From contig CM059449.1 in NCBI GenBank assembly GCA_030390025.1, positions 15,438,001 to 15,502,000 of the forward strand: 64,000 nucleotides of DNA, read 5' to 3'. The position numbers and the translations under genes were made by a program. The number at the start of each line of letters is the position of its first letter. Position 1 is the stretch's first letter. The notes below the pieces were generated by a model. That model saw only the letters and a list, made by a program, of their open reading frames with translations. It was not told the origin of the DNA and did no database searches. Of the stretch, positions 15,892 through 64,000 are shown one piece after another. Source of the DNA: Squalus acanthias. Lineage: Eukaryota.

Positions 15892-18800
15892 CATGCGGGG
15901 GGATGTCGGCATAGACCTCTTCATCACTGAACCACAAAGGGAGGAAGAAGCAAATCGTTACATGTTTAAAACATGCAGTACGTGTCACATGAAAATAAAG
16001 GCAGCAAAATGTCACAGTGATATCTACGCACCATTGCAAAGGTGGAGCGAATTCTGTGGAAAGACAAAGAACAAACAAAGAATATCTGTTATATCTGAGA
16101 ACGTATTTAGCACAACTGCATTCTTAACTACGTCTCGGTTTTTATCATTTGTCAATAATAATTAATAAATGTTTATCTACGGGCAGTGGGAGTGGGAAGG
16201 GTGCACTGCAGTCGGCTCCCATTTCATGGTGCGAGCCAGTCTCATTGCAACGCTAACTGCCGGGTGAGGGTGCCCTTTATCCCTGTCTAGAAGGGCAATG
16301 TGTAAAGATAGTTTAGGACATCCAGCATCTAGCGGGCGTGGTTGACCTGAATATAATGAAGCATTAAACGGATGATGTGTAGCTGCCCCAACAAATCAAA
16401 AGCGCTGTCATACTGATCCAATAAAAGGTATGCTTTAGAGATTTTGGCTAAAGTATAGCGTTAGTACGGTGCTGTACCTGAATGGCACTCCAGCAGTGCT
16501 CGCTGCTGATACGGTGGGTAATTTTAACCTAAGGCCGGGCGGGATCGGGCGGAAGTCCGGTTTTACATATTACCCTCCACTGACTTCACTGGAGAGTAAA
16601 ATCGAGCTGTGTGTAATGCTGGCGTTGCACCCGGTCTCTTCCATTTCCCGACGTCCGTGTTCGGTTAAAATTTCCCCGTGTCCAACAACACAAGGTGAAC
16701 AATATTACATCTCCAACAAGCGAGAATCTAACCACCGCCCCTTGACGTTCAATGGCATTACCAGCGCCGAATCCCCCACCATCAACATCCTGGGGGTTCA
16801 GCATTGACAAGAAACTTAACTGGACCAGCTATATAAATACTGTGGCTACAAGAGCAGGTCAGAGGTTGGGTATTCTGTGACGAGTATCTCATCGCCTGAC
16901 TCCCCAAAGCCTTTCCACTATCTGTAAGGCACAAGTCAGGAGTGTGATGGAATACTCTCCACTTGCCTGGATGAGTGCAGCCCCAGCAACACTCAAGAAG
17001 CTCGACACCATCCAAGACAAATTAGCCTGCTTGATTGGCACCCCATCCCCATCTTAAACATTCACTCCCTCCACCACTGGCGTACCGTGGCTGCAGTGTG
17101 CACCATCTACAAGATGCACTGCAGCAACTCGCCAAGGATTCTTCGGCAACACTTCCCAAACCCGTGACCTTTTCCACCTAGAAGGACAAGGGCAACCGGC
17201 GCATGGGAACACCATCACCTGCAAGTTCCCCTCCAAGTCACACACCATCCTGACTTGGAAATATAACGCCGTTCCTTCATCGTCACTGGGTCAAAATCCA
17301 GGAACTCCCTTCCTAAAGCACTGTGGGAGTAACATTCATGACACGGACTGCAGCGGTTCAAGAAGGCGGCTCGCCACCACCTTCTCAAGGGCAATTAGGG
17401 ATGGGCAATAAATGCTGGCTTTGCCATGTACGCCCACATCCCAATAACAAATATTTTAAAATATTAGCAAAAGGCAAGCTACTGAGTTTATTCCTTGGCA
17501 ATTCGCACAAGTATAATACCGAAGCCTCGTTGAATCTTGTTAAATGATTCTTTAATCGGTGGTGCTCACCATCCACGTTAGGTTCATCATAGATCGGCTC
17601 ATTCCTTCGGGACAACAAACAAAGAAGAGGAAATGAGTGTTACTGCAGAGTTACAGAGCAATTAGCATAAAAGATGTAGGAAACGTTAACTCTGAGATTT
17701 ACCGACCTTCCCATTGGTGGAGGAACATCTGCAAAAGTAAAAGTTCACCATGAAAGCTTTGTAACGTTAATGCAATCCGTCTGAAAACAGTTCGACTACA
17801 AGAAACTGTTTCCACTGGTGGGAGGGTCGGTAACCAGAGGACACAGATTTAAGATAATTGGCAAAAGTGCGAGAGGGGAGTTAAGGAGAATTTTTTATGC
17901 AGTGAGTTGTTATGGTACGGGAAACACTACCTGAAAGGATGGTGGAAGCAGATCCCCCGCCCCCAAGATGTTTTCTCCCTATCGCCCCTTTCCCCCAGGC
18001 TCCCGCCCCGATGTTCTCTCCCTTCTCCCCTGATGCTCCGGTTCCGATATTCTCTCCCTGTCCCCCCGTCCGCATCCCCCCCACCCCCACCCAATGCTCC
18101 TGCCCCGATCTTCTCTCCCTCACCTCCCCGATGCTCCGGCCCCGATGCTTCCCTCCCTCCCTCCTGCCCAATCTTCCTCCGGCCCCCGACAACCCAACCT
18201 CACCTCCGGCCCGCACCTGATTCCCTCCCACCTCACAGCTCCCAACCAGCCTTTCCGCCCTGCACCCAACCAGGCTCCGGATTAAAATTCCGGCCATGGT
18301 AGCACCCAATCACCAGCCCGAGTCAGACCAGTTAGTTCGGCATATCTCACGGATCCAACCATGGGATCTCTCTGGCACTGGTGACTCAGGAGTACACCTG
18401 GCAGTGCATCTAGATTTTGAAGCAACCGGTCCATTGAGGAGCAGGTTAACTGCTCTGCAGGTGCGTCACTCACCAGCTGGATTAATTTCATCATAGGCGG
18501 AACCAGCGATGTCCATCCAGGGTCTGGGAAAGAGAAAAACAAACAATCACATAGCTGAAACAAAAATCCAGCTGATTAAAAAAATGCTTCACCCTCATAA
18601 CCACCAACCAACCTTTGTGCTTGCGGAGCTAACTCTGTGGGAATAAAAGTCGAAAATTAAGGTCTATCCTTTGATGCAAACAAGACATTTGATACTTTGA
18701 AATGAGATTCAAATTATATGTGCCTCTTATGTCCATCCAGCAATAATAATCAGCGAAACTACTGAAGTCCTTTACCAACAATAATTGCTAATTTAAAAAA

Positions 18801-21800
18801 AATTGTTTAAAGGACTATTTAAAAAATCGACCAGTTAAATACATATAACTAATACTTACCATTAGAAAGAATGTTACTGCAAGGCGCAATATTGCTTTGG
18901 GATCAAAACGGAAAAGGGAAAAAGATGTCAGTGGATTGAATATCTAAATGCACATCAATTAAATAGAGATATAAAGAGAAGAGTGATCAGCACTTCAATA
19001 TTCACTGACCGTTGTAACCGTGCAGGTTCGAGACCTGCGGGAATAAAAGGTGATGGAGAAAGTGTTACAACTTTACTACGGGCGGACGGTAGCATCGTGG
19101 TTATAAGAACATAAGAAATAGGAGCAGGAGTAGGCCATTCGGCCCTTCAAGCCTGCTCCGCCATTCAGTAAGATCATGGCTGATCTTCTCCCTCATCTCC
19201 ATCTCCCAGCACTATCCACATATCCCTTGATTCCCTTAGAATCCAAAAATCTATCGATCTCTGTCTTGAATATACTCAATGACTGAGCCTCCACAGCCCT
19301 CTGGGGTAGAGAATTCCAAGATTCACCACCCTCTGAGTGAAGAAATTTCTCCTCACCGCAGGCCTAAATGGCTGACCCCTTATTCTGAGACTGTAACCCT
19401 TAGCTCTAGACTCGCCAGCCAGGGGGAAACATCCCTCAGCATCGACCCTGTTATGTTACTAGACTAGTAATCCAGAGGCCTGGGCTAATGATCCGAATAC
19501 ATGGGCTCAAATCCCAGCACTGGCAGCTGGGGAATTTAAATTCAAATAATTAAATAAATCTGGAATAAAAAGCTATTATCAGTAATGGTGATCATGAAAC
19601 TACCGGATTGTCATAAAAATCCATCTGGTTCACTAATGTCTGGCCTATATGAGCCATAGCAATGTGGTTGACTCTGAAATGGCCTAGCAAGCCACCACCA
19701 AGGTGGCTCACCACCACCTCCTCGAGGGCAATTAGGGATGGGCAATGAATGAATAAAAAATAAATAAACTTTCCTTATTTGAAAGAACAGCATCCCCAAC
19801 CACAATCCGGTCAAGATCAGCTGACGGTTTCAACTGAACGAGACCAGTATCGTTTATGTAATAAACCGACTCAATCCCTAACCATCTGAAAATGTCTGGT
19901 ATTAAATATAATCATTTAATATCATTTTCTGTGCCTGAACTACAAGCAGCCCACGAATGTAAAAATAAGAGCCTAAAAATTGCCATTAATAACTTTTACT
20001 GAGGGACACCTGCCGCATTATGGAACGTGGAATAGTTCGGATTATACTTTAACAATGTAAATTGAACAATTTGTTCATCCATTAGTAATGCGGAAAGATA
20101 AATATCACACTAACCCACCAAAGGTACATTTCCCACTGGCATTTCATAGCCTATTCAAGCAAAACGTGTTCAGAGTGGTAAAACCGAGCGATTTGAACGA
20201 GTCACTTACGATCTAAAGGGATGCCTTCATAAAATCGATTATTCATTCTAAATCTCAAAGAAAAAAGGCGCATTATCGAACAGTACACACATGTTATATA
20301 CGTCAATTTTGGAAAAAAGTTTTTTGTGGGTAGGGGAGATTTACCAACCTCTGAAATTGTAGGCGGCGAACTGTAGAAATGAAAAGTAACAATAAAAGTA
20401 ACAATTTGAATATAAACATTACTAAAAAGAACCAAGATTAACTGGCCATTATCACATTGTTGTTTGTGGGATCTTGCTGTGCGCAAATTGGCTACCGCGT
20501 TTCCTGCATCACAACAGTGACTACACTTCAAAAAAGCACTTCATTGACTGTAAAGCGTTCTGAGGGCGTGAAAGGCGCTGTGTGAATGCAAGACTTTCTT
20601 TACAACAACATCAAAGGCGAACCAAATGTCACTGGCGTTTGAATGCATGCATCTACTTTATGGTTATATTCGGAAGCGCAATATTGCTCTTTCAAATAGT
20701 TACCTTTTGTCAGACCATAACCTGCGGAGAACAGGAGGAAAGCGACTAAAACTCCGGCAGCGGTGTACAACAAGCTGTTGCTTAGCGACGATTGGCTGGT
20801 TGGCTCTGTGGTCGGTTGTACTGGGAGCCGGCCGAGACAGAAGACAAAATAAGAGATTAGTTTCACCCAGAACATCACTTACTGACTCCCGCTCTCCACT
20901 GCTGGTGAATGTACAGCGTGCCCCGACACCAGCCAATAGGTAATGCTATTTCAATGGGTGATGAGAACTACAGGTGCAGCGGTGCTGATTTTTTCCATCT
21001 CCCCCCCATTTGCTAATTGGGCTTGTGATATTTGTTATTTATATTTTTGACTTTAACAGCTAATGTTTTTTTTCAAATTGATACAAAGTCAATTGTTATC
21101 GAAAATATATCGTGACAAAACACTTAACGATTATAATCTCGTCATTGAATTATCTGTTCTCAATATTCTATGGAAGAGGGGTTGGTTGTGTATGTACAGA
21201 GGAACCTGGGTATCCTTGTACACAAGTCACTGAAAGCAAACATGCAGGTGCAGCAAGCAGTTAGGAAGGCAAATGGTATATTGGCCTTCATTGCATGAGG
21301 ATTTGAGTACATGAGCAAGGATGTCTTACTCCAGTTATACAGGGCACTGGTGAGACCACACCTGGAGTACTGTGTGCAGTTTTGATCTCCTTACCTAAGA
21401 AAGGATATACTTGCCATAGAGGGAGTGCAGCGAAGGTTCACCAGACTGATTCCTTGGATGGCAGGACTGTCGTATGAGCAGAGATTGGGTCGACTAGGCC
21501 TGTATTCACTAGAGTTTAGAAGAATGAGAGGGGAGCTCATTGAAACGTATAAAATTCTGACAGGGCTAGACAGACTGGATGCAGGGAGGATGTTTCCCCT
21601 TGCTGGGGGGTCTAGAACGAGGGGTCACAGTCTCAGGATACGGGGTAGCACAATTAGGACTGAGACGAGGAGAAATTTCTTCACTCAGAGGGTGGTGAAC
21701 CTGTGGAATTCTCTACCACAGAAGGCTGTGGAGGCCAAGTCACTGAATATATTTAAGAAGTAGATAGATTTCTAGACACAAAAGCCATCTAGGGGTATGG

Positions 21801-24800
21801 GGAGAGAGCGGCAATATGGTATTGAGATAGAGGATCAGCCATAATCATATTGAATGGCGGAGTAGGCTCAAAGGGCCGAGTGTCCTACTCGTGCTCCTAT
21901 TTTTCTAAGTTTCTATGTTTCTATGTGTCAGAGTGTATGCACATGTGTTAAGGTAGGCGTGTTAGAGAGACAGAGAGAGAGCTGGGAGGTGAGAGAGAGA
22001 GCGAGAGAGAGAGAGAGAGACGAGCGGTAGAACATGGTACAAGTTATGATGGCGAGGTAGCGAGATCAGAGTTGCTTTTTCTTTTCTTTACGCTGGACAA
22101 TATATTTAATTTGAAAGGTCTACCTCTATCTTGTCCTGCACTTCATACACTNNNNNNNNNNNNNNNNNNNNNNNNNNNNNNNNNNNNNNNNNNNNNNNNN
22201 NNNNNNNNNNNNNNNNNNNNNNNNNNNNNNNNNNNNNNNNNNNNNNNNNNNNNNNNNNNNNNNNNNNNNNNNNNNNNNNNNNNNNNNNNNNNNNNNNNNN
22301 NNNNNNNNNNNNNNNNNNNNNNNNNNNNNNNNNNNNNNNNNNNNNNNNNNNNNNNNNNNNNNNNNNNNNNNNNNNNNNNNNNNNNNNNNNNNNNNNNNNN
22401 NNNNNNNNNNNNNNNNNNNNNNNNNNNNNNNNNNNNNNNNNNNNNNNNNNNNNNNNNNNNNNNNNNNNNNNNNNNNNNNNNNNNNNNNNNNNNNNNNNNN
22501 NNNNNNNNNNNNNNNNNNNNNNNNNNNNNNNNNNNNNNNNNNNNNNNNNNNNNNNNNNNNNNNNNNNNNNNNNNNNNNNNNNNNNNNNNNNNNNNNNNNN
22601 NNNNNNNNNNNNNNNNNNNNNNNNNNNNNNNNNNNNNNNNNNNNNNNNNNNNNNNNNNNNNNNNNTGTTTGTGTGTGTTTGTTTGTGTGTGTATTTGTGT
22701 GTGTGTTTGTTTGTTTGTCTGTGTGTGTTTATGTGTGTGGAAACTATCATAACTCCTTAATAAACGTTTTGGTGATCAAATGGGAATAGTTATTAAACAC
22801 ACAGGGGGAATGTTTATAGCCCATGCATCCAGACATAGAAATAGAAATAAAAACAGAAAACGCTGGAAATACTCAGCAGACTAGGCAGCCTCTGTGGAGA
22901 GAGAAACAGAGTTAACGTTTCAGGTCGGTGACCTTTCCTCAGAACTGGAAAAAGTTAGAGATGGAACAGATTTTAAGCAAGTGCAGGGGCAGGGAAAGGG
23001 AGGTGGGGAGGAAAGAACAAAAGTGACGGTCTGTGATAGGGTGGAAGGTCGGAGAAATTAAATGACAAAAGGGATGTTAGTACAAAGCAAAAGTCATAGA
23101 AATAGAATGTTATGCAAATTTTCACTACATTAATCTATTTTCTTTACATGTAAGACCCTCCGTGCTCAGTCCGCCGTTATATAGTAAGGGACCGGCCGAG
23201 CCAGGGATTATCGTGGAACAGTCCGTTAGTAATAATCAGCCAACTCACGCACTACGTCAAGCTTTGTTCCTGGTCCACTTTTTTCCGCCGATCCCAATAG
23301 TTGCACTTTGCAGTAGTAGAGCCCGGAATCGTAATGTCTCACGTCTTTTATAGTAATGGAAGCGTCCCTCCTTTGTGTGAAATCCTCGGCACTTGCCCGC
23401 GATAGCCGTCCGCTGAATTCCCTGCTTTGGGTGGTGACTTCAGGTCCGTCGACAGAGTTTTTGTGCCACTTGATCACAGCGACCCCCCCCGGGGGCCCTT
23501 CATACGTGCAGTTCAGGAGCACCGACTGCCCCTCCGTGGCGTTAATGACGGACGGGACTTGAATTACTGTAATGCTCTCTGCAGCAATTCCTGCTAGGGG
23601 ATGGTTTCTGATTAGCGAGATGCACCAAGTCTTTATTTCACCTTAACCAAACGCTGAAGATGCTGGAGGCCGCTAGTGAAGAACAGACAGGGACCGTGCC
23701 TCTCCAGACAGCCAGCGGTGGAGGGCCATTGTAAATGTAGCAAAGCTCATCCTGTTGGGTGTAATTTTCCCAGACCCCTGCCACAGTTGGGGCCCGAGGA
23801 GCAGCGGAGGGATTATTGGAACACCACGGGTGCACAGACGGACAGACATTTCCCATCAATTAACTTTAGCCGTTTTCCCATAATCTGTCCCGCTGCAGGG
23901 CTGGTGGCGCGGGGCCTCGGAAAATTGAATGGTTTGGCTACAGCCTGGAAGGAGGCCATTCGGCCCGTCGAGCCCGTGCCGGCTCTCTCTGCAAGAGCTC
24001 TTCAGCTAGTCCCACTACCCCGCCCTTTCCCCTGCGATTTTTTCCCCCTTCAAGTACTTATCCAACTCTCCTTTGAAAGCCGAGATTGAATCTGCCTCCA
24101 CCACCCTCTCAGGCAGTGCATTCCAGATCCTAACAACTCGCTGCATAAAAAAGTTTTCCCTTATGTCGCCTTTGGTTCTTCTTCCAATCACCTTAAATCT
24201 GTGTCCTCTGGTTTGCGACCCTTCCGCCAATGGGAACAGTTTCTCTCTATCTACTCTGTCCAGACCCCTCATGATTTTGAACAGCTCTATCAAATCTCCT
24301 CTCAACCTTCTCTGCTCTAAGGAGAACAATCCCAGCTTCTCCAGTCTATCCACATAACTGAAACCCTCATCCCTAGAATCATTCTCGGATTTATTTTCTG
24401 CACCCCCTCCAAAGTGCGATGCCCAGAATTGGACACAGTACTCCAGTTGAGGCAGAACCAGTGTTTTATAAAGACTCATCATAAATTCCTGGCTTTTGTA
24501 CTCTATGCCTCTATTTATGAAAATGAGAAGTCGCACAACACCAGGTTATAGTCCAACAGATTTAATTAAAATTACAAGCTTTCGAAGCTGTCGCCCCTTC
24601 CTCAAGTAAAGTTACAATCTCATTTTTGTCCACCCCAGTCCAACGCCGGCATCTCCGCATCATGACCCCTATTTATGAAGGCCAGGATCCCGTTTGCATT
24701 TCCCCCCCTCACCCCCCTCATGTCGCCTCTGGTTCTTAATCACCTTAAAACTGTGTGCTCTGTTTCTCGAACCTTCCGCCAGCGGGAACAGTTTCTCTCT

Positions 24801-25944
24801 ATCTACTCTTTCCAGACCACTCAATTCCACCCATTGGGGTAGATTTCCGTCTTTACCGCCTGGGCGCTACACGTCTTGTGACGGAAGGAGAAAGGAAAAT
24901 CCTGAGTGAGATTCCCACTCTTCTCATAGAACCCAGCGGATTTCCTTCCAGTGGATTGAATGGGAAGAAAGTCGGGCAAGTGCTGTTAGCGCCAGATTGT
25001 CCTTCCTGCGTTCCGCCCAGGCCATGCCTAAAGCCCACGTGGTAAAGGCAAAGATGTACACCTTAATCACAGCAAGCATGATTGAGCTCTCTCTCAGTAT
25101 CGCAATCAGATAACGAAAGAAAATCATTCATTTTTAAAAAAATATCGCACATTCATGGCCAATTCGTTAACATCCTCGCCTCTGCGTCAAGCTTATGGGT
25201 TGGAGCCTCACTCGAGCATTCCATCATATCATTCTGGCTCATACCCCAGTGCAGCGCTGCATGCTGCAGTTACGGTTCTGTCGATCAGGCATAAAGTTGA
25301 ACATAAGAAGATAAGAAATAGGAGCAGGGATAGGACATCGGCCTTTCGAGCCTGCTCCGCCATTCAATAAGATAATGGCTGATCTTCTACCTCATCTGCA
25401 CTTTCCCACACTATCCCCTTATCCCTTGATGCCCTTCATATTCAAAAATCTATTCATCTGTCTTGAATATACTCAACGACTGAGCCTCCACAGCCCTCTG
25501 GGGTAGAGAATTCCAAAGATTCACCACCCTCTGAGTGAAGATATTTCTCCACATCTCAGTCCTAAATGGCCAACCCCTTATTCTGAAACTGTGACCCCTG
25601 GTTCTAGACTCCCCAGCCAGGGGAAACATCCTCCCTGCATCTACCCTGTCAAGGCCCCTCTCTGTCTGTTCAGTTGATTCAAGTGGCCGTTAAAATTTTC
25701 ATGTTACTAATCTAAGAAGTCCTGGCCAACTGTCCTTTCCAATTAACATCAGCGCCTCGTTTCTGTTCGATCCCTAGCGCCTTGGTTTTCAACTAAGCCC
25801 CGCCACTGTTTGCTTTGTATGCGAGGCGCTATGATATCGTTCCGAGCGAGCGTTGAAGGCGCTGAATTCTCTGACTGAAGTATGGTACAGTCGGTACTTA
25901 CCAGAGACAAGGGTCAGTGCCCACATAACGCATCGGGAATCCAT
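15892..25944 (-). CDS. NCR3: Gene A: NKp30/NCR3-like single V-set Ig receptor with a long Tyr-rich tail (13 well-supported coding exons; possible further exons at 14102-14142 and 9630-9680)
   Basis: Phase-compatible GT-AG exons: leader 25902-25944, V 23249-23590, TM 20704-20820, then microexons 20349-20370, 20210-20247, 19010-19034, 18860-18894, 18613-18634, 18474-18523, 17707-17728, 17570-17604, 16032-16053, 15892-15926, giving one open frame. The symbol denotes family resemblance, not proven orthology. Confidence 0.8.
16690..17450 (+). mobile_element. LINE 3' fragment of a second (L2/Crack/Daphne-like) family
   Basis: MEYSPLAWMSAA..LKKLDTIQ-type C-terminus; other copies at 31940-32610(+), 40465-41015(-), 61215-61755(-), 44020-44340(-) and 54235-54520(-). 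Clade assignment is tentative. Confidence 0.75.
17952..18280. repeat. C-rich low-complexity tract
   Basis: Runs of C3-C7 with degenerate ccccgatgctcc units. Confidence 0.8.
20704..20820 (-). CDS. Gene A stalk and TM exon
   Basis: 117 nt, phase 1-1, cccag acceptor and gtaact donor; QPTTEPTSQSSLSNSLLYTAAGVLVAFLLFSAGYGLTK, with no charged residue in the hydrophobic core. Confidence 0.85.
21190..21925 (+). mobile_element. CR1 LINE 3' fragment
   Basis: QRRFTRLIP..NFFTQRVVNLWNSLP and a (tttctatg)n tail. Confidence 0.88.
21962..22022 (+). repeat. (GA)n microsatellite
   Basis: Directly visible. Confidence 0.9.
22152..22665. other. Assembly gap (N run) followed by a TG-rich microsatellite 22666-22740
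   Basis: N run. Confidence 1.
23249..23590 (-). CDS. Gene A V-set Ig exon
   Basis: 342 nt, phase 1-1; LNC..KW..GPEV...EFSGRL...DASITIKDVRHYDSGLYYCKVQLLG...GPGTKLDV resembles human NKp30 (GKEV..PEFRGRL..AELHIRDVRGHDASIYVCRVEVLGLG..GNGTRLVV). Confidence 0.93.
23945..24800 (-). mobile_element. CR1 LINE 3' fragments
   Basis: FINRGIEYKS..LEYCVQFW. Confidence 0.8.
25300..25655 (-). mobile_element. CR1 LINE 3' end
   Basis: Near-identical to 14410-14770 and 27250-27600. Confidence 0.85.
25902..25944 (-). CDS. Gene A signal-peptide exon (MDSRCVMWALTLVS-G)
   Basis: ATG at 25944, 43 nt, phase-1 donor G|gtaagt; same length and WA motif as the gene C leader. Confidence 0.8.
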
Positions 25945-38086: not shown

Positions 38087-38091
38087 CGACA

Positions 38092-43025: not shown

Positions 43026-43082
43026 GGTCTGTAATTCTGTAGGTCACTATTGACAGATTGCATTGTTCCATTTATACTCTAG

Positions 43083-48265: not shown

Positions 48266-50958
48266 GTCTATTCCCAGTTACTAACGGATGTGGTTCCACA
48301 GCACAAATCTTCAGCATTTATTGTCACATAAGTGGAAATCTCAACCAATCGGTAAAACCCTTACTTCTGGGGTAGAAGTTTGCGGTTCAAGGGCCACTCC
48401 AGGAGTTGCGCACGTCAACTACGCGAATGTCCACTGCAACACTGATGGAGTCTGGGAGTTAAGCCTGGGAGGAGCAAAAGGGAACGTTTGGCTGGGAAAT
48501 TGGCACTGCAGTAACGCTGGATTCTCCTTTTATCAAAATCCATGACGTGCCCCGGCAATGCTGAACGCCTAGACAGTGAAGAGAAAAAATCTACCCGCAT
48601 CCGTCGGAAATTAGTTTGGTGTGCCAAGCTTTGAGACGTCATGCCAACTAATCATTTCTCGGGGAGGTGGTTCGGCCGAGCTCCTGCCGTGACATCTCTG
48701 GAAGTTCGGCAGAACCCCGCTTTAGCTATTACGCGCTTCTCTGAGTTCCGCCGATCTTCCGCCGACGTTACCGCAGGAGAGCGGGAGAACCCCGCAGAAG
48801 TTATTCACCCCCCTTGAGTTTAACATAAAACATTCATTTTAATAAAAGGTACAACGGAAAATCAACAGAACAACCTGACATGGGTCAACTGAGAAGAACT
48901 TTTATTACGAAAATATGAAATACTTTACAGGATTATGATGAAATGTAAGGAGTTATGTGATGAAACTAGGCTGAGTGAACAGTAACGAGTATGAATGCTC
49001 AACATGTTGGTTTTCATTTTAACAGCGGCATGAACCAGTTTATTTTCTAGGATAGCACGCCCCTAAACATAGGGGACTAATACATGTCATACAAATGTGA
49101 TAAATGTTCACAACTAACACTAAAGAGTCTAATGTTAAAGCATTGGAGATTCCAAGCCCTTGTTACTGAATTATGTGTGGATAAACCTCACTCACTAAGT
49201 TAGAGGTCAAAACATTCGCCTGGAAATTCCCATGGAGGCTTCTCCGATCATCCGCCATTGAAGATCCCACAGAACCCCCGAGCTTCCGCCCAAGTTACGG
49301 CGGGAGATCGGGACAACTCTGCGGAAATTCCAGAACTTGTCCATCGGGGCAGGGGCGTCTCATCATTGGGGTGAAATGTATCGGCTCCTCTTACTTCACC
49401 GAAGCGTACAGCACCGCTTCTCGCTTCACAGGGCGCTCAGTTTGATTGCTGTCCTGAAGATTCAGCGTGGCATATTGCAACTTGTCATCCCCCTCTCTCT
49501 ATTGAGATGAAAGGGTTTCAGTGTTGAATAAAATATTGTAAACTGATTATATCGTAGGGCCTCTAACCCAGCGCACCAGATGTTGTGCAGTTTCAATGGC
49601 ATATAATTCCACCCAGTAAACATTCTACATATAATTAGAATATGACTCCACCTATCAAATATTGTTTCGTTAAATAGGATTGATCGCGTCGTTCCAAATA
49701 TTCCTGACCATTTGAATATATTTCAGCGAGTCAACGATTGCACGATTTAAGTAACAAGCAAGGGAAACATTCGATGTAATTAACACTTCATTATAATGCT
49801 AAATCCATGCATTTAGAACAATTCACACTTAGTGAATTCAGGAGCAGTGGTTCAGTCAGCATTTGGGAAAGACAGAGTAACATTTGGGAATAACTGTTCA
49901 GGAGCACTTTCCGTTCGAAGGCAAAGAGCCAGATCACCGGTTACCCTGTGTTGTCTCCTCCAGGTGCTGACTGACCTACTTTACATATCCAGCACTTTCT
50001 GTTACGGCTTCAGATTTCCTCCTTATCTCGACTTATCAAAGTAGGTGTATTTTTGCCTGTGTGCGTGTGTATGCCTGGGTGCCCCTATTTGGGGTCCATT
50101 TTAATGTTCCTGGGTGTATCTCCCTGCTTTTTTTATTCGTTCATGGGATGTTGGCGTCGCTAGCAAGGCCGGCATTTATTGCCCATCCCCAGTTGCCCTT
50201 GAGAAGGTGGTGGTGAGCCGCCTTCTTGAACCGCAGCAGTCAAGGTACTCCCACATTGTTTTTCGTAGCGGCTTTTTACAACTGAGTGTCCATTTTAGAG
50301 GACAGTTAAATGTCAACCACATTGCTCTGGGTCTGGAGTCACATATAGGCTAGACCAGGTAAGGACGGCAGATTTCCTTCCCTAAGGGATATTAGTGAAC
50401 TGGATGGGTTTTTACAACAATCCGATAGTTTCATGTCACAATTATTGATACTAACTTTTTATTCCAGATTTATTCAATTCAATTTAAATTCCCCAATTGC
50501 TGTGGTGGGGTTTTGAACTCATGTCGACACGGATCATTAGCGCAGTTCTTCGATGGATTACTAGTCCAGCAACATAACCACTTTGCTACCGTTCCCTATA
50601 TATGTTTGTACATGCACCTGCTTATTTGTGTGTGGCTATATGTATTTGCGAGTGTCTGTGTGAGTGTGTCTTTCTGTGTGTGCATTTGATTGAATTCTGG
50701 GACTGTTGTGTTTCATTTCATGCCTTTCCTGGTTGGCTTTCTGTTGAATTATAACTAATACTTTAGTCCCCGTCTCTATTGAATTTCGATTTTCAACTTG
50801 CCGCGCCTGTGCGTAAAACTGGCATTTGGGATGGGCCGCACCTGTGCTTTACGCCTGTGTGGCAAGTTGCGAATCTACCCCACATCTTCAAGAAGAAAAG
50901 TTGAGGCCGTCCAACCTAGTTTCATCTTTAGATTTTTACAACCAACTGAGAGAACATT

Positions 50959-53900: not shown

Positions 53901-56900
53901 GGGTGATCAACGTGGTTCTTCCGCGGACCCATCTTTGCATTTTGTTGGCGTGCAATGTTGTAATTTCTATTTACACACACAACTATATCCGTCACTACCT
54001 CCATTTACAGGATGACAGTGAAATCTAACTTATAATACATGTGTTGTTTGGTTTATTCCCAATATTGGTACGCGGTGATTTCAAGGCTCACATGTTGCTC
54101 TAATTACGGGGCTCCAGTCTTCGCCTCGCACACTGTAACTGGGTTGACTTCTTATCTATAGTCCTACCTAAAATTGTATACAGCAACTGAATGTCATTAA
54201 TATCCCCTCCATTTATTTATTTTAAAAGATAATTCTCGGGATACGGACGACGCTGGCGAGGCGGGCATGTTATTGCCCGACTATGGTTGACCCCTTGAGA
54301 AGGTGCTGGTGGGCCGCCTTCTTCTTGAACTGCTGCAGTCAGGTGTGGTGAAGGTTCTCCCGCCGTGCTGTAAGGGAGGCAGTTCCAGGATTTTGGAAGG
54401 AACAGCGACACAAGTCCAAGTCAGGATGGTGTGTGACTTGGCGGGGGACTTGGAGGTGATTGTGTTCCCCGGCGACTCCTGCCCTTGGCCTTCTTGGTGG
54501 TGCAGTTCGTGGGTTTCGGAGTTCCAATTGATCTGATGGAGAATTTACCTATACGGCCAATATTAACCCGAAGTAAAATCCCATATGACTGCGTGCAATT
54601 TCATTTGAAAGAATATCTCCACCAATCCAAACTTACTGTGTTGACGCCGTTCCACGGTCACTGTTGTCCCGGGTCCGTCTGCTGCAGCGAATCCCACGAG
54701 CTGCACTTTGCAGAAATAAAACCCGGTATCTTCCGGTTTCAGCTGGATTATTCTAATGGACGCGTTTTTCCTCTGGCTGAAATCCTCTGTACTTGCCCCG
54801 AACACCCTGCCTCTGTATTCCGCTGTATTGTTGGAAACTTCATTTCCCTGTTTGGTGCCTCGGTGCCACGTGTAACTGCCGATTCCTGTGGGACCCTCAT
54901 ATCTGCAGAGCAGGTCCGCTGTCTGGCCCGCGGTTTTGGTGAGTGATTGCGGGCTCTGAATTACGGTGATGTTTCCAACAGTAACTGCTGCAAGTGGGTA
55001 AAACAGACCATTTATACATATACAGGGCACTTCTTTGCTTTAAAGCAGGCCGTGGAAGGGCTGGTTTTAAGCAAATATTATTTCGGAAGATTTTTGATAA
55101 GGTATTCCTGATCTTTAACTTGAGGGAATAAAAGCAGAAAACATTGGATACGCTCAGCAGGCCAGGCAGCATCTGTGGAGAGAGAAACAGAGTCAACGTT
55201 TCAGGTCGACGACTTTTCGTCAGAACTGGAAAAAGTTGGAGATTTACCAGGTCTTAAGCAAGTGTCGGGGCAGGAAAAAGGGGGGAGGGGAGGAAAGAAC
55301 AAAAGGGAAGGTCTGTGATAGAGTGGAAGGCAGGAGTGATTAAATGACAAAAGGGATGATGGTACAAGTAAAAAGGAGATGGTAATGGGACAAGTAAAGG
55401 AACAAAAGATGGGTCTAGGAGAGGTTTAAATGTTTAACTTGAGGGATATTGGTGCTGGAGCTGGAGCGCCTTCGGTTTTTCGGCGCACTCCTCGGTCAAG
55501 TATAAAATGGATCTGGTACAAAGTACCTCTGTCCCGTTCCAGATAATAAGCATTCACTTTAATTTCAGTTCTCCCGATATTCTTTCTGTGTTGCCCCCGC
55601 TCTCATTAACACTTTGAGCGAGGGTGTGAAATGGGCAATCTCGAAGCCCGATGTTCTCTTCCATTTGGGGGTCATTTTAACTTTGGGTACTAAATGGGCG
55701 AGGTCGGGTCGGCTGCCTGAAATTACAACGGGCGGATGATCCGATGTCCCCCGTTTCACACGGTCGCAAACATTCAAAATCACCTCCTGGAAGTGAGGAG
55801 AAGTTAAGTCTTATCAGTCTGATCAGATTGGAAGTCAGATAATTGCTAAACCCCAGCGACCTTCACACTATTAATCAGCGGTGACTGGAGAATATGGAAA
55901 ATACAAACAGAATATTAATAGTCAAAATAATGAAACCGGCTAAATGTTACATGTAGCGACATTACAAATTGGATGAATGGTTTCCTACTTTGGGTATATG
56001 TTATACAATCGCAAATACCTCTTTAAAAATTGTTTACCGATAAGAGAAAATAGCCAATTATTTTGCGACCTCGTTGCACGCAGCAAGCAGCGCAACTCTT
56101 GCCCTGTGTTGATAACTAGAGAAAGGTTGTATCCAGTTAAATTACTATAAATAATAGGAATTGAACAAAAAAAATCATGCCTCCTGGAAACGGGTCTTTA
56201 CTGGAACACAGCCAGCACTGCAAATATTCACTGTTGTGGATAGAGAATATTGGCATTTTTGGTAGATGTAATATCATAGAATCATAGAATAGTACAGCAG
56301 AGAAGGAGGCCTTTCGGCCCATCGAGTCTGCGCCGGCTCTTTCCAAGAGCAATCCAGTTAGTCCCACTCCCCCGCTCTTTCCCTCTATCCCTGCAATATT
56401 TTTCATCATCAAGTATTTGTCCAATTCCCTTTTGAAGGCTACTATTGAATCTGTATCCACCACCCTATCAGGCAGAATACTAGGGCAATCTGTACTTCAG
56501 GGAGCAACATACATTGTGCTCTCCTGGACCAGATACAATAAACCTCTTTACCCGAGAGCTGATCCGTCTCTCACGTTTAGCTCTCTCCATCTCTCTCTGT
56601 CTTCCTCAGTCTCTCTTTCTCTCACACACACACACGCACGATTGTAACCCATTTCTCTCTCTCTCTCTTTTCCTATTCCTATCAATCACTTCTTGATTTA
56701 ACCCGTCTACCCTCCCACTATTTCCAACCTTGATGCTGTCATACGCCATGGGCCATGGGCCCTTCACTTAAATGCCTCAATTCAAAATAAGCAACCTCGA
56801 AAGCGTTAGCTTCTCTGTGGCGAGCCCTGGTTAACTGCGAGATTGATTATATTACCAGGACATTAATCATTACCACGGCGCTGAGATATTAAGATGGTTA

Positions 56901-57314
56901 ATCTCGCATCTATGAGAACGTCCGCACGAGCCTGATGTTTTTTAAATTGCAGGCGAGCTGGTCATGAATATAAAATGGTTTAAATCCACAATTTGGTGCT
57001 GTGATCAGCAAATATGGGATATCGGAATAAGATTTAACCAGATACACATATAAGTAAGAAAAAAATAGATGGGAGGACATCGCTATGGGTATCTAATATC
57101 TAATAAAGACATAGAATATTTCATTAAAGTCATAAGAAAATTATGGAAATTAAAATCAGTCCGTTTCAATAACCGGCGGCCGCTCCGCAACGCCAGCTTT
57201 ACGCCCAGGCGGCAAGTTGAAAATCTACCCCATATTCTTGAATGGACCTGATGTGTCAGAAATAAGCTTACCGGAGAACATAGCGAATGCCCAGGCAACT
57301 GCAGCCCAATTCAT
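50959..57314 (-). CDS. NCR3: Gene C: NKp30/NCR3-like receptor with uncharged TM and Tyr-motif tail
   Basis: Exons 57272-57314 (MNWAAVAWAFAMFS), 54637-54987 (V), 53062-53202 (TM), 52729-52750, 52582-52616 (PDPLYSVIHET), and probable 51046-51070 plus 50959-50974 (ALSAEEQIGYIIM*); all phase compatible. Confidence 0.78.
53062..53202 (-). CDS. Gene C stalk and TM exon
   Basis: 141 nt, phase 1-1; LVYAAVAVPLLIIIIIIIIIVIVVI followed by basic SRHRKR. Confidence 0.88.
54637..54987 (-). CDS. Gene C V-set Ig exon
   Basis: 351 nt, phase 1-1; ITVIQSP..LLC..IGSYTW..GNEVSNNTAEYRGRV..NASIRIIQLKPEDTGFYFCKVQLVG..GPGTTVTV. Confidence 0.93.
57272..57314 (-). CDS. Gene C signal-peptide exon
   Basis: 43 nt from ATG to G|gtaagc, hydrophobic, matches the gene A leader in length. 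Confidence 0.78.
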
Positions 57315-57509: not shown

Positions 57510-57541
<32 letters not shown>

Positions 57542-61116: not shown

Positions 61117-64000
61117 ATGCAAACTATTCACATGTGGATGTTCTTGAATTTACTGACCATACTTTTGCATATCGGTGAGCCGCTGTCTTCTGACGTTCAG
61201 ATTTTAATTTTATTAATTCGCTTATGGGATCTGGGCGTCGCTGGCAAGGCCAGCATTTATTGCCCATTCCTAGTTGCCCTTGCGAAGGTGTTGGTGAGCC
61301 GCCTTCTTGAACCGCTGCAGATCGTGTGGTGAAGGTACTCCCACAGTGTGCTTATAGGGAGTGGGTTCCAGGATTTTGACCTAGCGACGATGAAGGTTAG
61401 GCGATATAGTTCTAAGTCAGGATGGTGCGTGACTTGGAGGGGAACTGGGAGGTGGTGGTGTTCCCATGCACATGCTGCCCTTGACCTTCTAGGTGGAAGA
61501 GGTCGCGGGTTTGGGAGGTGCTGCCGAAGAATCCTTGGCGAGTTGCTGCAGAGCATCTTATAGATGGTACACACTGCAGCCACTGTATGCCGGTGGTGGA
61601 GGGAGTGAATGTTTAAGGTGATGGATGGGGTGCCAATCAAGCGGGCTGCTTTGTCTCGGATGGTGTCAAGCTTCTTGAGTGTTGTTGAAGCTGCACTCAT
61701 CCAGGCAAGTGGGGAGTATTGCATCACACTCCTTACTTATGCCTTGTAGATGGTGAAAATTCTATATTTATTAAGGTGTACGATTATTTGGTTCGGCAGG
61801 TTGTTTCGTTATGCACAACTAATATATAACGAAGTTACATTGTGTAAACAAACTGTTTTATTTTATTATGCTGTGTTACTTTGCGTTCAACGGTCTAAGC
61901 ATTTTATCTTTCGGGGAGCTTTATATATATATTATACACATTAACGTTCTCCTCCATGCAGATGCTGTGAATTTGCATTATACAAATAACATAATTAATA
62001 GGCCTACTAAAATGTACTGATGGAAATAAATTAACTCACGGACTCCTGACCGACTGTGTTACACATGGAATTATCTGACATTATACCTTCTACTCGACAA
62101 TTCAACGTCTTTGCTTTCGACACAATTTATTCCATGAGCAAACGATTCATATTCAAAACATTTCCAACGTTTTCATACTTACACTTGACGTAATATAAAG
62201 GACAGGTTTCCGTCTTAAATGATTAAAGATGACAGAAGTGAAATCTTCCCCCAGTAGGACGGTGAAATACAGCTGCGTTGGGAAGTGGTGATTATATTAT
62301 GTCAATAGTTTTGCAAAGAAAACCAAGTGTGTGAAAATACAGCAGATCCCCCTTTATAAAGTGACAATTGCCTTTAATTTTTGCACCATAAAGTTCTGAA
62401 TGTACACAGCTGTTCAATCTGATTATGGAGTGCAATTTCCCAAAGTTCCGTTGAGAAACTGGAAAAGGACCCAATGTAATGACAGCTGAATACCGGTTTG
62501 TAGCTCAATGATTGATGGATCAATCAGCATTTAAAATTCTTCATAATAGCTTGTAAATTGTGGGACACAAGAGATCATTGTGTCCAAAAAAAACCTGTCC
62601 CTGTTTGACAGATACATGCTTCTTTCTCCAGAAACACACATGTTGTCTCTTGAATCTATTTGTACTGCCCACTCCCACGGCCGTCTCCAGTAACTTGTTC
62701 CACAAATCTCTTACTCTATAGGCGAACAGTTTCCGCCTAACTTCCCTTCTTACAGCTAACTAGTTAACGTCTAAAGTGTGACCCTTGGAAATTAGATCCT
62801 TCCCCACAGTGAGCGATCTATCTGGGCTCAATTCATAATAATTGTACAACGCTAATTGACAGGTTGCGGTATGTCCTGTACGGATACATTGATCCTAATT
62901 TAATCTAACAAAAAAAGACACCCAGTAACATCAATTAGTGATAGTGGAAGATACTTTAATTTGAGCTTCGCCCCTCATGGCAGATGACATTTAACGCAGG
63001 AAAGTGCGAAGTGATACATTTTGGTGGGAAGAACGAGAAGAGGCAATATAAACTGAAGGTTACGATCCTAAAGTGGGTGCCTGAACAGTGAGACCTGGGG
63101 GTATATGTCACAAATCATTGTAGGTGGCAGGGCAGGTTGACAAAGCGGTTAACAAAGAATGCAGGATACTGGGCTTCATAAATAGAGGCATAGAGTACGA
63201 AAGCAAGGCAGTTATGATGAACCTTTATAAAACACTGGTTCGGCCTCAACTGCAGTATTGTGTCCAGTTCTGGGCACCGCACTTTAGGAATGATGTGAAG
63301 GCCTCAGAGAGGGTGAGGAAAAGATTTACGGACTTGGTTCGGGGATGAGGAACTTCAGTTACGTGGATAGACTGGAGAAGTCGGAGTTGTTCTCCTTCGA
63401 ACAGAGAAGGTTGAGAAAAGATCTGATGGAGGTGTTCAAAATCATGAGGGGTCTAAACAGAGTAGATAGAAAGAAACTGTAACCATTGGCGGAAGGGTTG
63501 TGAACTAGTGGACACAGATTGGCAAAAGAGCCAAAGGCGAAATGAGAAAACCCTTTTTTCGCAGCGAGTGGTTAGTACCTGGAATGCACTGCCTGAAAGT
63601 GTGGTGAAGGCATATTCAATCGTGGCTTTCAGAAGGGAGTTGGATAAGTACCTGAAGGAAAAAATGCAGGGCTACGGGGAAAGGGCGGGTGAGTGGGACC
63701 GGCTGAAGTGCTCTTGCAAAGAGCCGGCACAGGCTCGACGGGCCAAATGGCCTCCTTCTGTGCTGTAACCATTCTATGATTCCATACTGGTCCGTAAATC
63801 TGTAGGTCACTATTGACAGATTGTATTGTTCCATTTATACTCTAGACAGTGGGTTGACGAGTGGAATCAGAGTTTTCCAGTCCCCAGATGCCATCAATGT
63901 AACAGAAGGAGGATCGGTGCAGCTGAACTGCACTTTTGAAGCGATTGGTTCTGTTGGACATGTTGTTTGGAGGCGGGCCACAGAAAACATGGTAGTGTCG
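61117..64000 (+). CDS. NCR3: Gene D (partial): paralogue of gene B; leader 61117-61174 and V exon from 63846 running off the window
   Basis: MQTIHMWMFLNLLTILLHI with intact G|gtgagc donor; V exon DSGLTSGIRVFQSPDAINVTEGGSVQLNCTFEAIGSVGHVVWRRATENMVVS. Confidence 0.85.
62975..63785 (+). mobile_element. CR1 fragment in gene D intron 1
   Basis: FINRGIEYES..LQYCVQFWAPHF. Confidence 0.85.

What the first reader, a model, noticed from the sequence alone, without database searches (positions are those of the whole stretch)
15892..64000. Paired-receptor-like cluster of NKp30/NCR3-family genes in a cartilaginous fish
Four related V-domain genes fall into two signalling classes. A and C (minus strand) have uncharged TMs and Tyr tails. 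B and its duplicate D (plus strand) are the other class: B has a TM Lys, a stalk Cys and essentially no tail; D's TM lies outside the window. Established: a basic TM residue is the hallmark of coupling to ITAM adaptors (DAP12, FcRg, CD3z), and mixed activating/inhibitory clusters typify KIR, LILR, NITR and Xenopus XMIV families, whereas human NCR3 is a single activating gene. Inference: a diversified NK-type paired receptor system undergoing birth-and-death evolution. I cannot verify from here whether it has been described.
Basis: partly seen in the sequence, partly recalled or inferred. Interest (0 to 1): 0.85.

Follow-up and report, generated by a model that had tools for sequence, protein, structure and literature searches.

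The report
Shark NKp30-family receptor gene cluster
This stretch of a shark-type genome holds four genes of the NKp30 (NCR3) immune-receptor family with different signalling designs, a multigene family already described in sharks, and the one complete adaptor-coupled copy is broken by a frameshift.

Summary
There are four V-domain genes: A and C on the minus strand, B and D on the plus strand. A and C have uncharged transmembrane (TM) segments and tyrosine tails. B has a stalk Cys, a TM Lys and a 7-residue tail. D is an 88%-identical duplicate of B, cut off by the window end.

A and C are clearly NCR3/NKp30 family. Human NKp30 is their best solved-structure match (E 1e-14 and 4e-13; next family about 1e-7 for A, about 1e-9 for C). 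C is 72% identical to a nurse shark NCR3 protein.

Three corrections:
- **B is probably a pseudogene.** Its V exon is 338 nt where 339 are needed. The frame breaks at an A6 run, and contigs of two other DNA samples show no indel there.
- **Not "paired" in the strict sense.** The B/D V domain is only 28-40% identical to A and C. A and C belong to old lineages shared with horn shark, catshark and nurse shark. C ends in two conserved canonical ITIMs. A's tail is 10 microexons with four tyrosines.
- **Already described.** Deposited nurse shark NCR3 proteins already include both designs, uncharged TM with a Tyr tail and TM Lys with no tail. This is a new member of a known kind.

Earlier notes of this scan report more NKp30-like genes on both sides of the window.

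The parts
25902..25944 (-). Gene A leader exon (MDSRCVMWALTLVS, phase-1 donor)
   Evidence: 10 of 15 residues identical to the N-terminus of horn shark XP_067865368. ATG, hydrophobic core and GT donor found. AG/GT and phase checked.
23249..23593 (-). Gene A V exon (345 nt, VJ-type V-set domain)
   Evidence: Pfam V-set, E 2.3e-13. Best PDB hit is human NKp30, E 7.7e-15, against 1.7e-7 for the next family. 67% identical to the horn shark A-type V. Boundaries read.
22152..22665 (.). Assembly gap inside gene A's V-to-TM intron
   Evidence: The catshark model aligns from the V exon to the TM exon with no residues left over, and the phases fit. The gap was not filled or looked up.
20704..20820 (-). 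Gene A stalk/TM exon with an uncharged TM
   Evidence: Aligns to the catshark XP_038671257 C-terminal part.
15892..20370 (-). Gene A cytoplasmic tail: 10 microexons.
- 20349-20370
- 20210-20247 (FYEGI)
- 19010-19034
- 18860-18894
- 18613-18634
- 18474-18523 (SAYDEI)
- 17707-17728
- 17570-17604 (IYDEP)
- 16032-16053
- 15892-15926 (VYADI)
The model ends in phase 1, so the 3' end was not found.
   Evidence: Collinear tblastn hits to the horn shark XP_067865365 tail. Spacer exons found by an AG/GT and phase scan; their peptides match the horn shark spacers. All exons have AG/GT and consistent phases. Control: 5 hits at E<=0.2 on the gene strand, 0 on the opposite strand, and 0 or 1 in 20 shuffles.
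40371..40428 (+). Gene B leader exon. The donor reads GG in the window at 40429-40430.
   Evidence: Aligned with D's leader, which has a GT donor. Contigs of DNA runs X1 and X5 read T at 40430.
43083..43420 (+). Gene B V exon, 338 nt. The frame shifts at the A6 run 43295-43300.
   Evidence: The two halves lie in different frames. Both halves match V-set. No indel is listed at the run in X1 or X5, although both cover it. The nearest relative is the second V domain of a sawshark protein.
45516..45637 (+). Gene B stalk/TM/tail exon: stalk Cys, TM Lys, 7-residue tail, stop
   Evidence: The only listed differences in X1/X5 contigs, at 45553 and 45559, are synonymous (codons read).
57272..57314 (-). 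Gene C leader exon (MNWAAVAWAFAMFS)
   Evidence: 73% identical to the horn shark C-type N-terminus. ATG and GT donor seen.
54637..54987 (-). Gene C V exon (351 nt)
   Evidence: Pfam V-set, E 1.1e-12. Best PDB hit is human NKp30, E 3.8e-13. 72% identical to nurse shark NCR3 QTT61898.1. Sits in a 100/99 clade with it. Boundaries read.
53062..53202 (-). Gene C stalk/TM exon. The uncharged poly-Ile TM is coded by an (ATC)n run.
52582..52750 (-). Gene C candidate tail microexons: 22-nt spacer 52729-52750 and 35-nt cassette 52582-52616 (PLYSVI)
   Evidence: AG/GT, phase and pyrimidine-tract scan. Weak match to the nurse shark NCR3 tail NPLYADM, E 0.83. Not confirmed by RNA.
49391..49502 (-). Gene C terminal exon with two canonical ITIMs (LQYATL, VLYASV) and a TAA stop
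   Evidence: tblastn against the whole window: 64% identity to the catshark tail (E 4.5e-10) and 66% to the horn shark tail (E 3.5e-9). Against the 7.3-kb tail region: 46% identity to the brownbanded bamboo shark tail (E 2.6e-9). Sequence and stop printed.
61117..61174 (+). Gene D leader exon (MQTIHMWMFLNLLTILLHI) with an intact GT donor
63846..64000 (+). Gene D V exon, first 155 nt, open as far as the window end
37925..38086 (.). Assembly gap at the end of a Harbinger-type transposase ORF, between genes A and B
   Evidence: DDE_Tnp_4, E 1.6e-41, at 38092-38733 (-), and a Myb/SANT ORF at 35883-36188 (+).

Best explanation
The window holds part of a multigene cluster of NCR3 (NKp30)-family single-V receptors of a shark-type cartilaginous fish. 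Each gene has a leader exon, one VJ-type V exon, one stalk/TM exon and, in A and C, tail exons.

- **Gene C** is an inhibitory-type member. It has an uncharged TM and a conserved last exon with two canonical ITIMs 22 residues apart. Once phosphorylated these would recruit SHP-type phosphatases (inferred).
- **Gene A** has an uncharged TM and a long tail built from alternating 35-50-nt tyrosine exons and 22-25-nt spacer exons. It carries three YxxI motifs and one YDEP. One of the YxxI motifs (SAYDEI) fits the ITIM consensus. Which way A signals is not settled.
- **Gene B** has the adaptor-coupled design: TM Lys, stalk Cys and a 7-residue tail. That design would pair with an ITAM adaptor (inferred). 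Its V exon is one base short, so B is most likely a pseudogene or null allele.
- **Gene D** is B's recent duplicate. It is intact as far as the window shows, but its TM is out of view.

A and C are old lineages shared among sharks. Only B/D shows recent duplication and decay. The family and its two designs are already on record for the nurse shark.
For: **Family**
- The A and C V domains hit human NKp30 first in the PDB, at E 7.7e-15 and 3.8e-13. The next families score 1.7e-7 (A) and 7.1e-10 (C).
- A profile of the A and C V domains found 1403 proteins at E<=0.001. Names were looked up for 30 of the 150 listed.
- The nearest named proteins are shark proteins. They include nurse shark NCR3 QTT61898.1 (72% identical to C), horn shark XP_067865368 (67% to A) and catshark XP_038671257.

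**Tree**
- C sits in a 100/99 clade with nurse shark, bamboo shark, catshark and horn shark genes.
- A groups with the horn shark and catshark A-type genes (81/98).
- All three window rows fall inside the NCR3-like group against the SIRP-like outgroup (100/99).

**Gene models**. The control for A's tail is.

**B's lesion**
- The two halves of the V exon are in different frames, and the exon is 338 nt.
- Contigs of runs X1 and X5 cover 43295 at depth 32.8 and 41.5. Neither has an indel row there.

**Both designs already known**
- Nurse shark NCR3 QTT61904.1 has a stalk Cys, a TM Lys and no tail.
- Its whitespotted bamboo shark relative keeps the Lys.
- QTT61898.1 has an uncharged TM and a Tyr tail.

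**B/D duplication**: 87.7% identity over 2.95 kb.
Against: - There is no RNA evidence for any of the four genes. The two runs guessed to be RNA gave zero depth on every non-repeat 184-nt bin of the stretch that holds B, and no V-to-TM joint.
- The splice models rest on predicted proteins of other sharks and on AG/GT and phase logic.
- The contigs laid on B differ from the window by about 1-3%. They could come from another allele or a very close extra copy, so 'frameshift confirmed' has that caveat. The tool itself warns that a missing row does not prove identity.
- The B/D V domain does not hit NKp30 specifically. Both halves of B, and the intact sawshark relative, hit SIRP, TCR and NKp30 at similar E-values.
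- The tree had only SIRP-like rows as outgroup.
- C's exons between the TM exon and the last exon are not established.
- The Kinlein 2021 paper could not be read. What it says about signalling classes is inferred from deposited sequences and from my recollection of its abstract.
Confidence: 0.85

Rival explanations
1. This is a working paired-receptor system. B/D-type activating receptors (TM Lys, adaptor-coupled) and A/C-type tyrosine-tail receptors see related ligands and balance each other. B's defect would be an allele or an error, and D is functional.
For: - B's TM exon is intact, and the only listed differences in other samples are synonymous.
- D's leader, donor and first 51 V codons are open.
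- The leader donor that is broken in the window reads GT in two other DNA samples.
- TM-Lys NCR3 genes are conserved between nurse shark and bamboo shark.
Against: - B's frameshift shows no indel in two other DNA samples.
- The V domains of the two classes are 28-40% identical, so shared ligands are not implied.
- Between B and D, pN 0.077 and pS 0.083 over 51 codons. The V exon is no more conserved than the unique intron, 92.3% against 92.7%, as expected without constraint.
- No expression evidence.
Confidence: 0.2
2. B and D are not NCR3-family genes. They belong to a separate VJ-type IgSF lineage, SIRP-like or a lineage of their own, that merely sits inside the NCR3 cluster.
For: - PDB searches with both halves of B's V, and with the intact sawshark relative, give no NKp30-specific ranking. 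NKp30 scores E about 2e-6, SIRP about 7e-7, DCC/Robo about 2e-9.
- In the tree, B plus the sawshark protein branch at the base of the ingroup on long branches (0.78 and 0.88).
Against: - Within the window, B's best matches are A and C.
- Among the 150 profile hits, its best matches are the A-type horn shark protein (40%) and the sawshark protein.
- The branch separating the NCR3-like rows, B included, from the SIRP-like rows has 100/99 support.
- Exon plan and location are the same as in the neighbouring NCR3 genes.
Confidence: 0.2
3. B's frameshift is an assembly or contig artefact at a homopolymer, and B is intact in the animal.
For: - The break lies in an A6 run, a classic site of length errors.
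- The window differs from other samples at another B site, 40430, which shows the assembly or its haplotype is not identical to them.
Against: Contigs from two different samples and studies cover the run and show only a substitution at 43295, no length change. A six-base run is short for an Illumina-type error (general knowledge).
Confidence: 0.1

Closest known systems
Nurse shark NCR3 family (Kinlein et al. 2021, Immunogenetics 73:333; GenBank MT914154-MT914161)
   Same: - Single VJ-type V exon receptors.
- Several divergent subtypes in one species.
- C is 72% identical in its V domain to QTT61898.1 and shares a 100/99 clade with it.
- Both designs are present in the deposited proteins. QTT61898.1 has an uncharged TM and a Tyr tail. 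QTT61904.1 has a stalk Cys, a TM Lys and no tail.
   Different: - The window is from another species. No protein closer than 72% was found.
- B is not the orthologue of QTT61904.1, at 33-37% V identity.
- I could not read the paper. I do not know whether A-type or B/D-type subtypes, the microexon tails or the ITIM exon are described in it or in its supplements.
Human NKp30 (NCR3)
   Same: Best solved-structure match of the A and C V domains over the whole domain, including the F-G region with the GxGT motif. One V domain, a stalk and one TM.
   Different: - Human NCR3 is a single gene. From recall, it has a TM Arg that couples to CD3-zeta and FcR-gamma.
- A and C have uncharged TMs and their own tyrosine motifs.
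- B has Lys rather than Arg.
Predicted NCR3-like gene sets of horn shark, small-spotted catshark, bamboo sharks and devil ray
   Same: - Orthologous A-type and C-type lineages at 62-72% V identity.
- The same ITIM-bearing last exon in C-type genes.
- The same order of tail cassettes in the A-type gene.
- A catshark gene model fuses a C-type and an A-type gene in the same orientation, which fits the C-then-A order on the minus strand here.
   Different: These are automatic annotations, named SIRP-beta-like, turtle-like and so on.
Classical paired receptor families (KIR, LILR, SIRP alpha/beta, Xenopus XMIV) - features recalled, not tested here
   Same: ITIM-bearing and basic-TM members coexist in one cluster, with gene duplication and a pseudogene.
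   Different: In those families, activating and inhibitory partners usually have very similar ectodomains. Here the two classes share 28-40% V identity, and A and C are ancient lineages.

Membership tests
NCR3 / NKp30 family | Single V-set Ig domain of VJ type (G-x-G-T in the G strand) encoded by one exon | tested here: met
   V-set for A and C at E 2.3e-13 and 1.1e-12, and for both halves of B. One exon each, with GPGTKL, GPGTTV and GRGTQL before the donor.
NCR3 / NKp30 family | The V domain is more similar to NKp30 than to any other IgSF family (genes A and C) | tested here: met
   NKp30 chains take the top four places, at E 7.7e-15 for A and 3.8e-13 for C. The next family scores 1.7e-7 for A and 7.1e-10 for C. 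C clusters with nurse shark NCR3 at 100/99.
NCR3 / NKp30 family | The V domain is more similar to NKp30 than to any other IgSF family (genes B and D) | tested here: inconclusive
   Neither half of B ranks NKp30 first. The intact sawshark relative hits NKp30 at 2e-6, SIRP at 7e-7 and DCC at 2e-9. B falls inside the NCR3-like group against SIRP in the tree, but at its base on a long branch.
NCR3 / NKp30 family | Linkage to the MHC (class III region) | not testable with these tools
The window holds only these genes and transposons.
NCR3 / NKp30 family | Binding to a B7H6-type ligand | not testable with these tools
   Needs protein binding assays.
ITIM-bearing inhibitory receptors | Uncharged TM and cytoplasmic (I/V/L/S)xYxx(I/V/L), usually two copies 20-30 residues apart (consensus recalled) | tested here: met
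   Gene C's last exon has LQYATL and VLYASV 22 residues apart, then a stop. It is conserved in catshark, horn shark and bamboo shark proteins. Whether transcripts include this exon was not tested.
ITIM-bearing inhibitory receptors | The same consensus, applied to gene A | tested here: inconclusive
   Of A's four tyrosines, only SAYDEI fits the consensus. RFYEGI, PIYDEP and EVYADI do not.
Adaptor-coupled activating receptors (DAP12, FcR-gamma or CD3-zeta partners) | A basic residue inside the TM and a short tail without signalling motifs | tested here: met
   B's exon 45516-45637 has Lys inside the hydrophobic stretch and a 7-residue tail. The gene is frameshifted upstream. Adaptor pairing itself was not tested.
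Paired receptors in the strict sense | Activating and inhibitory members with closely similar ectodomains | tested here: not met
   B against A: 34% and 46% over the two halves. B against C: 28% and 33%. B's highest identity to any row in the tree is 38%.

The most novel reading that the evidence does not exclude
The B/D genes, together with the sawshark protein, may be a separate old lineage of VJ-type receptors at the base of the NKp30 family that is not among the published nurse shark subtypes. In the same cluster, the A-type tail, with tyrosine exons alternating with 22-nt spacer exons and conserved between distant sharks, may be an undescribed modular signalling tail. Alternative splicing could dial its exon content, and in C-type genes could switch the ITIM exon in or out of frame.
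Probability: 0.25. Interest if true: 0.5.

Novelty: new member of a known kind. Interest (0 to 1): 0.3.

Why it matters
NKp30 is the one NK-cell receptor traceable across jawed vertebrates, and its non-rearranging VJ domain bears on the origin of antigen receptors. This window gives exon-level models for four more family members in another cartilaginous fish. It shows that the ITIM-bearing C lineage and the microexon-tailed A lineage are conserved among distant sharks. It also corrects the picture of a tidy activating/inhibitory pair, because the adaptor-coupled copy that can be read in full is broken. It extends a described family and does not open a new one.

Tried and rejected
- **Word-indexed protein search, A's V segment.** No hit. 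The cause is the tool's length window of 76-241 residues, which excludes the 276-residue relatives. It does not mean relatives are absent.
- **Same tool, C's V segment.** Four shark proteins, none closer than 70%.
- **blastn of the A region against the C region.** Only repeats and the V exon align, so tail exons could not be found that way. I used proteins of other sharks instead.
- **Regex search for Tyr motifs.** It found only two of A's four tyrosine exons and none in C. It was replaced by tblastn plus the splice and phase scan.
- **PDB searches for the B lineage.** No family-specific answer.
- **Key papers not held.** Kinlein 2021 and Flajnik 2012. I saw only the title of Kinlein 2021 in the reference lists of two papers, and the accession range MT914154-914161 in a methods passage of PMC12227049.
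- **Recalled, not seen.** The 'eight subtypes' and MHC-linkage statements come from my recollection of the Kinlein abstract. Supplements were not requested and are closed, so they and the paper itself may already describe A-type or B/D-type genes and their tails.
- **Paper searches.** 'XMIV'+'NKp30' and 'NKp30'+'nurse shark'+'ITIM' found 0 papers. 'NCR3'+'cartilaginous'+'MHC' found 5, none about shark NCR3 signalling. Passages read in two NCR reviews were irrelevant.
- **Rejected idea: the GG leader donor as a second fixed lesion in B.** Contigs of both DNA samples read T at 40430.
- **Not done.** No structure prediction or fold search, because the sequence evidence for A and C was already clear and B cannot be given unbroken. 
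- Exons were searched and checked one by one, and phases were checked by coordinate arithmetic.

Full report
**What is in the window.** The 64-kb window is about 43-47% G+C and full of transposon remains: LINE reverse-transcriptase tails, an LTR-type element at 2.9-5.4 kb and a Harbinger-type transposon at 35.9-39.2 kb. It has two assembly gaps, 22152-22665 and 37925-38086. A tblastn of the candidate V segments against the window finds exactly four related V exons. These are A at 23.2-23.6 kb (-), B at 43.1-43.4 kb (+), C at 54.6-55.0 kb (-), and D at 63.8 kb (+), which is cut at the window end. All pieces match Pfam V-set.

**The gaps, tested first.**
- Gap 1 lies in gene A's intron between the V exon (ends 23249) and the stalk/TM exon (starts 20820).
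- The small-spotted catshark model XP_038671257 aligns residues 304-419 to the V exon and 419-459 to the TM exon with nothing left over. Both exon edges are phase 1.
- No coding exon therefore seems to be hidden in gap 1. Whether the scaffold join itself is right cannot be tested here.
- Gap 2 cuts the end of a DDE_Tnp_4 transposase ORF between genes A and B and touches no receptor exon.
- I did not fill or look up the unread letters.

**Family of A and C.**
- Against all PDB sequences, the four human NKp30 entries are the best hits for A (E 7.7e-15 to 1.4e-14; next SIRP-alpha at 1.7e-7) and for C (3.8e-13 to 1.7e-12; next 7.1e-10). The alignments run over the whole domain.
- A HMMER profile of the A and C V domains was searched against 1.84 billion representatives. 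It found 1403 proteins at E<=0.001, 305 at <=1e-10 and 26 at <=1e-30.
- I looked up names for 30 of the 150 listed.
- The nearest are shark and ray proteins: nurse shark NCR3 QTT61898.1, horn shark XP_067865368 and XP_067865395, catshark XP_038671257, and bamboo shark, basking shark, white shark, zebra shark and devil ray proteins. Many carry automatic names such as 'SIRP beta-2-like'.
- Elephant shark, frog, lizard and bichir NCR3 entries follow.
- By blastp, A is 67% identical to the horn shark A-type V and 62% to the second V of the catshark model. C is 72% identical to nurse shark NCR3 and 70-71% to the horn shark and catshark C-type.

**Tree.**
- I built a maximum-likelihood tree of 37 V-domain rows. 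The rows were 34 domains from 23 of the 150 proteins plus three window rows.
- The 23 proteins were the 20 named plus three unnamed SIRP-like ones. Together with the lizard protein named SIRP beta-2, those three served as the outgroup.
- Domains covering fewer than 80 profile positions were dropped.
- C falls in a 100/99 clade with the nurse shark, two bamboo shark, catshark and horn shark genes.
- A groups with the horn shark and catshark A-type genes, plus a long-branched lizard NCR3 (81/98).
- All window rows lie inside the NCR3-like group against the SIRP-like rows (100/99).
- The tree has no TCR, Ig, CD300 or NITR rows.

**Gene A.**
- The gene model has 13 exons. All have AG and GT, and their phases chain without a break.
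- Leader: 25902-25944, with 10 of 15 residues identical to the horn shark N-terminus.
- V exon: 23249-23593.
- Stalk/TM exon: 20704-20820, with an uncharged TM.
- Tail: ten microexons.
- tblastn of the horn shark XP_067865365 tail against 15700-20900 gave collinear hits on the gene strand.
- A scan for AG-exon-GT pieces of the right phase then found the intervening 22-25-nt spacers. Their peptides match the horn shark spacers one for one: RRLQFQ with RGLQCQ, EPARLQ with EPVGLQ, ELAPQAQ with DEAPQRQ, DVPPPMG with DVPPPLE, and EFAPPLQ with DFPPPFQ.
- As a control, the gene strand has 5 hits at E<=0.2 and the opposite strand has none. Of 20 shuffles of the region, 18 gave 0 and 2 gave 1.
- The tail holds four tyrosines: FYEGI, SAYDEI, IYDEP and VYADI. 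Only SAYDEI fits the ITIM consensus. The spacing is too wide for an ITAM (consensus recalled).
- The model ends in phase 1 at 15892, which is exactly the finding's start. The gene's 3' end lies further on or is a read-through, and I found no convincing next exon.

**Gene C.**
- Leader: 57272-57314.
- V exon: 54637-54987.
- Stalk/TM exon: 53062-53202, with a poly-Ile TM coded by an ATC repeat.
- The last exon, about 49391-49502, reads REGDDKLQYATLNLQDSNQTERPVKREAVLYASVK and then TAA.
- Against the whole window it matches the ends of the catshark protein (64% identity, E 4.5e-10) and the horn shark protein (66%, E 3.5e-9). Against the 7.3-kb tail region it matches the brownbanded bamboo shark protein at 46% (E 2.6e-9).
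- It carries two canonical ITIMs, LQYATL and VLYASV, 22 residues apart.
- Between the TM exon and the last exon, the homologues have 12-45 variable residues. Here I found only candidates: a 22-nt spacer at 52729-52750 and a 35-nt PLYSVI cassette at 52582-52616.
- The PLYSVI cassette resembles the NPLYADM end of the nurse shark cDNA protein QTT61898.1 (E 0.83).
- A horn shark isoform (XP_067865396) includes such cassettes and then reads what looks like the last exon in another frame. The frame reading is my interpretation, not a test. Alternative splicing may thus decide whether the ITIMs are made.

**Genes B and D.**
- B's stalk/TM exon (45516-45637) follows a good acceptor. It reads, after the split codon, AGVEPICHFPTLSVGLQITKTVLLIILIITGLTTYLCPT and then a stop.
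- B's V exon is 338 nt where phase-1-to-phase-1 needs a multiple of three. Its first 72 codons and last 43 codons are in different frames and meet at the A6 run 43295-43300. The first frame stops at 43325-43327.
- Both halves align to the V of a sawshark protein across the break.
- D 61050-64000 aligns to B 40304-43237 at 87.7% identity. This locates a shared leader exon: D 61117-61174 and B 40371-40428, 95% identical.
- D's leader has a GT donor. In the window, B's reads GG.

**Reads on B.**
- I laid contigs of two DNA samples of the same coded organism (X1 and X5, from different samples and studies) on 40250-45750.
- I also laid two small runs, X21 and X22, that the tool guesses to be RNA.
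- At 40430, all laid depth reads T (X1 30.6 of 30.6; X5 29.8 of 29.8). The donor is therefore intact in those samples.
- At the A run there is no length change in the indel table. Both runs cover the place, with depth 32.8 in X1 and 41.5 in X5 at 43295. Only a substitution A>G is seen there (X5 41.5 of 41.5; X1 7.69 of 32.8).
- The two listed changes in the TM exon, at 45553 and 45559, are synonymous.
- The guessed-RNA runs have zero depth on every non-repeat 184-nt bin of this stretch and show no V-to-TM joint.
- Caveats:
  - The contigs differ from the window by roughly 1-3% and could be another allele or a very close copy.
  - All runs are contigs.
  - 219 substitution rows and 1 indel row were not shown.
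- One X5 contig on the first part of B's V exon (43024-43183) has 4 differences in 160 nt. D differs from B at 12 of 155 positions in the V exon part. That contig is therefore B-like, not D.
- Between B and D, the V exon part has pN 0.077 and pS 0.083 (9 non-synonymous and 3 synonymous differences in 51 codons). It is as diverged as the unique intron, 92.3% against 92.7%. That fits loss of constraint in at least one copy, on small numbers.

**Is B/D really NCR3?**
- Within the window, B's best matches are A and C.
- Among the 150 profile hits, its best are the horn shark A-type (40% over 67 residues) and the sawshark protein (41% over 64).
- In the tree, B pairs with the sawshark V (90/78) at the base of the NCR3-like group.
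- PDB searches with either half of B, and with the intact sawshark V, do not single out NKp30.
- I file B/D as NCR3-like, with membership inconclusive.

**Known or new.**
[quoted passage not shown] 2021) appears in two reference lists.
- A 2025 paper lists nurse shark 'NCR3 genes' MT914154-914161 in its methods.
- The Kinlein paper itself and Flajnik et al. 2012 are not held.
- Two of the deposited nurse shark proteins came up in my search. QTT61898.1 has an uncharged TM and a Tyr tail. QTT61904.1 has a stalk Cys, a TM Lys (LTGLKLAVFSV) and no tail. Its 82%-identical whitespotted bamboo shark relative keeps the Lys.
- The coexistence of the two designs in the shark NCR3 family is therefore on public record.
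- B is not the orthologue of QTT61904.1, at 33-37% identity.
- Earlier unchecked notes of this scan report further NKp30-like genes 23 kb before and 19-25 kb after this window. They also report a similar 'pair' 1.9 Mb away near MHC class III genes. The scan has thus met this family several times on the same piece of DNA.

**Verdict.**
- The family assignment holds for A and C.
- The 'paired receptor' reading is only partly right. The two designs exist. However, the readable adaptor-type gene is broken, the ectodomains of the two classes are far apart, and A and C are ancient stable lineages rather than products of fast birth and death.
- This is a new member of a known kind, of moderate-to-low interest. 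The side points worth follow-up are A's microexon tail, C's ITIM exon choice and the basal B/D lineage.
B's V was read through with an X only inside a script, for the tree.

Noticed in passing
window 53096-53125 (-): Gene C's transmembrane poly-isoleucine run is coded by a perfect ATC trinucleotide repeat (about 8 units). TM length could vary between alleles by repeat slippage.
   Followed up: no
window 35883-39242: A Harbinger/PIF-type transposon. It has a DDE_Tnp_4 transposase ORF at 38092-38733 (-) (E 1.6e-41), a further N-terminal ORF up to 39242, and a Myb/SANT-like partner ORF at 35883-36188 (+) (E 1.4e-13). Assembly gap 2 cuts its end.
   Followed up: partly
window 36720-37310 (+): An ORF with a tandem repeat of about 14 residues (…QKPDVGVQLSKINESLEG…), lying next to the Myb-like ORF. 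It has no Pfam family above threshold.
   Followed up: no
window 2887-5401 (-): Remains of an LTR-type retroelement: an RT RNase H-like domain at 2887-3621 and a DUF7041 gag-like ORF at 4397-5401. The region has high G+C (54-57%).
   Followed up: partly
window 16073-16094 (-): A 22-nt AG/GT-flanked piece reading DITDILC resembles the horn shark A-type spacer DITDMVG. It lies upstream of the last two tail exons, out of order, and may be a relic of a duplicated cassette.
   Followed up: no
P0020 cluster (Polypterus senegalus): A bichir NCR3-like two-V protein shares its 90% cluster with a GenBank entry named 'PRC2A protein, partial'. This suggests the NCR3-like gene lies next to the MHC class III gene PRRC2A in that fish.
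   Followed up: no
window 40250-45750: Contigs of both DNA samples of the same coded organism differ from the window at many unique positions, where every laid contig shows the other letter. The assembled haplotype is therefore not represented in those samples. This may reflect high allelic divergence in this cluster or close extra copies.
   Followed up: partly
window 51045-51077 (-): A piece reading LTALSAEEQIG matches an alternative exon of a horn shark C-type isoform (IIALSAEEQMG, 8 of 11 residues). It is a possible alternative tail exon of gene C.
   Followed up: partly
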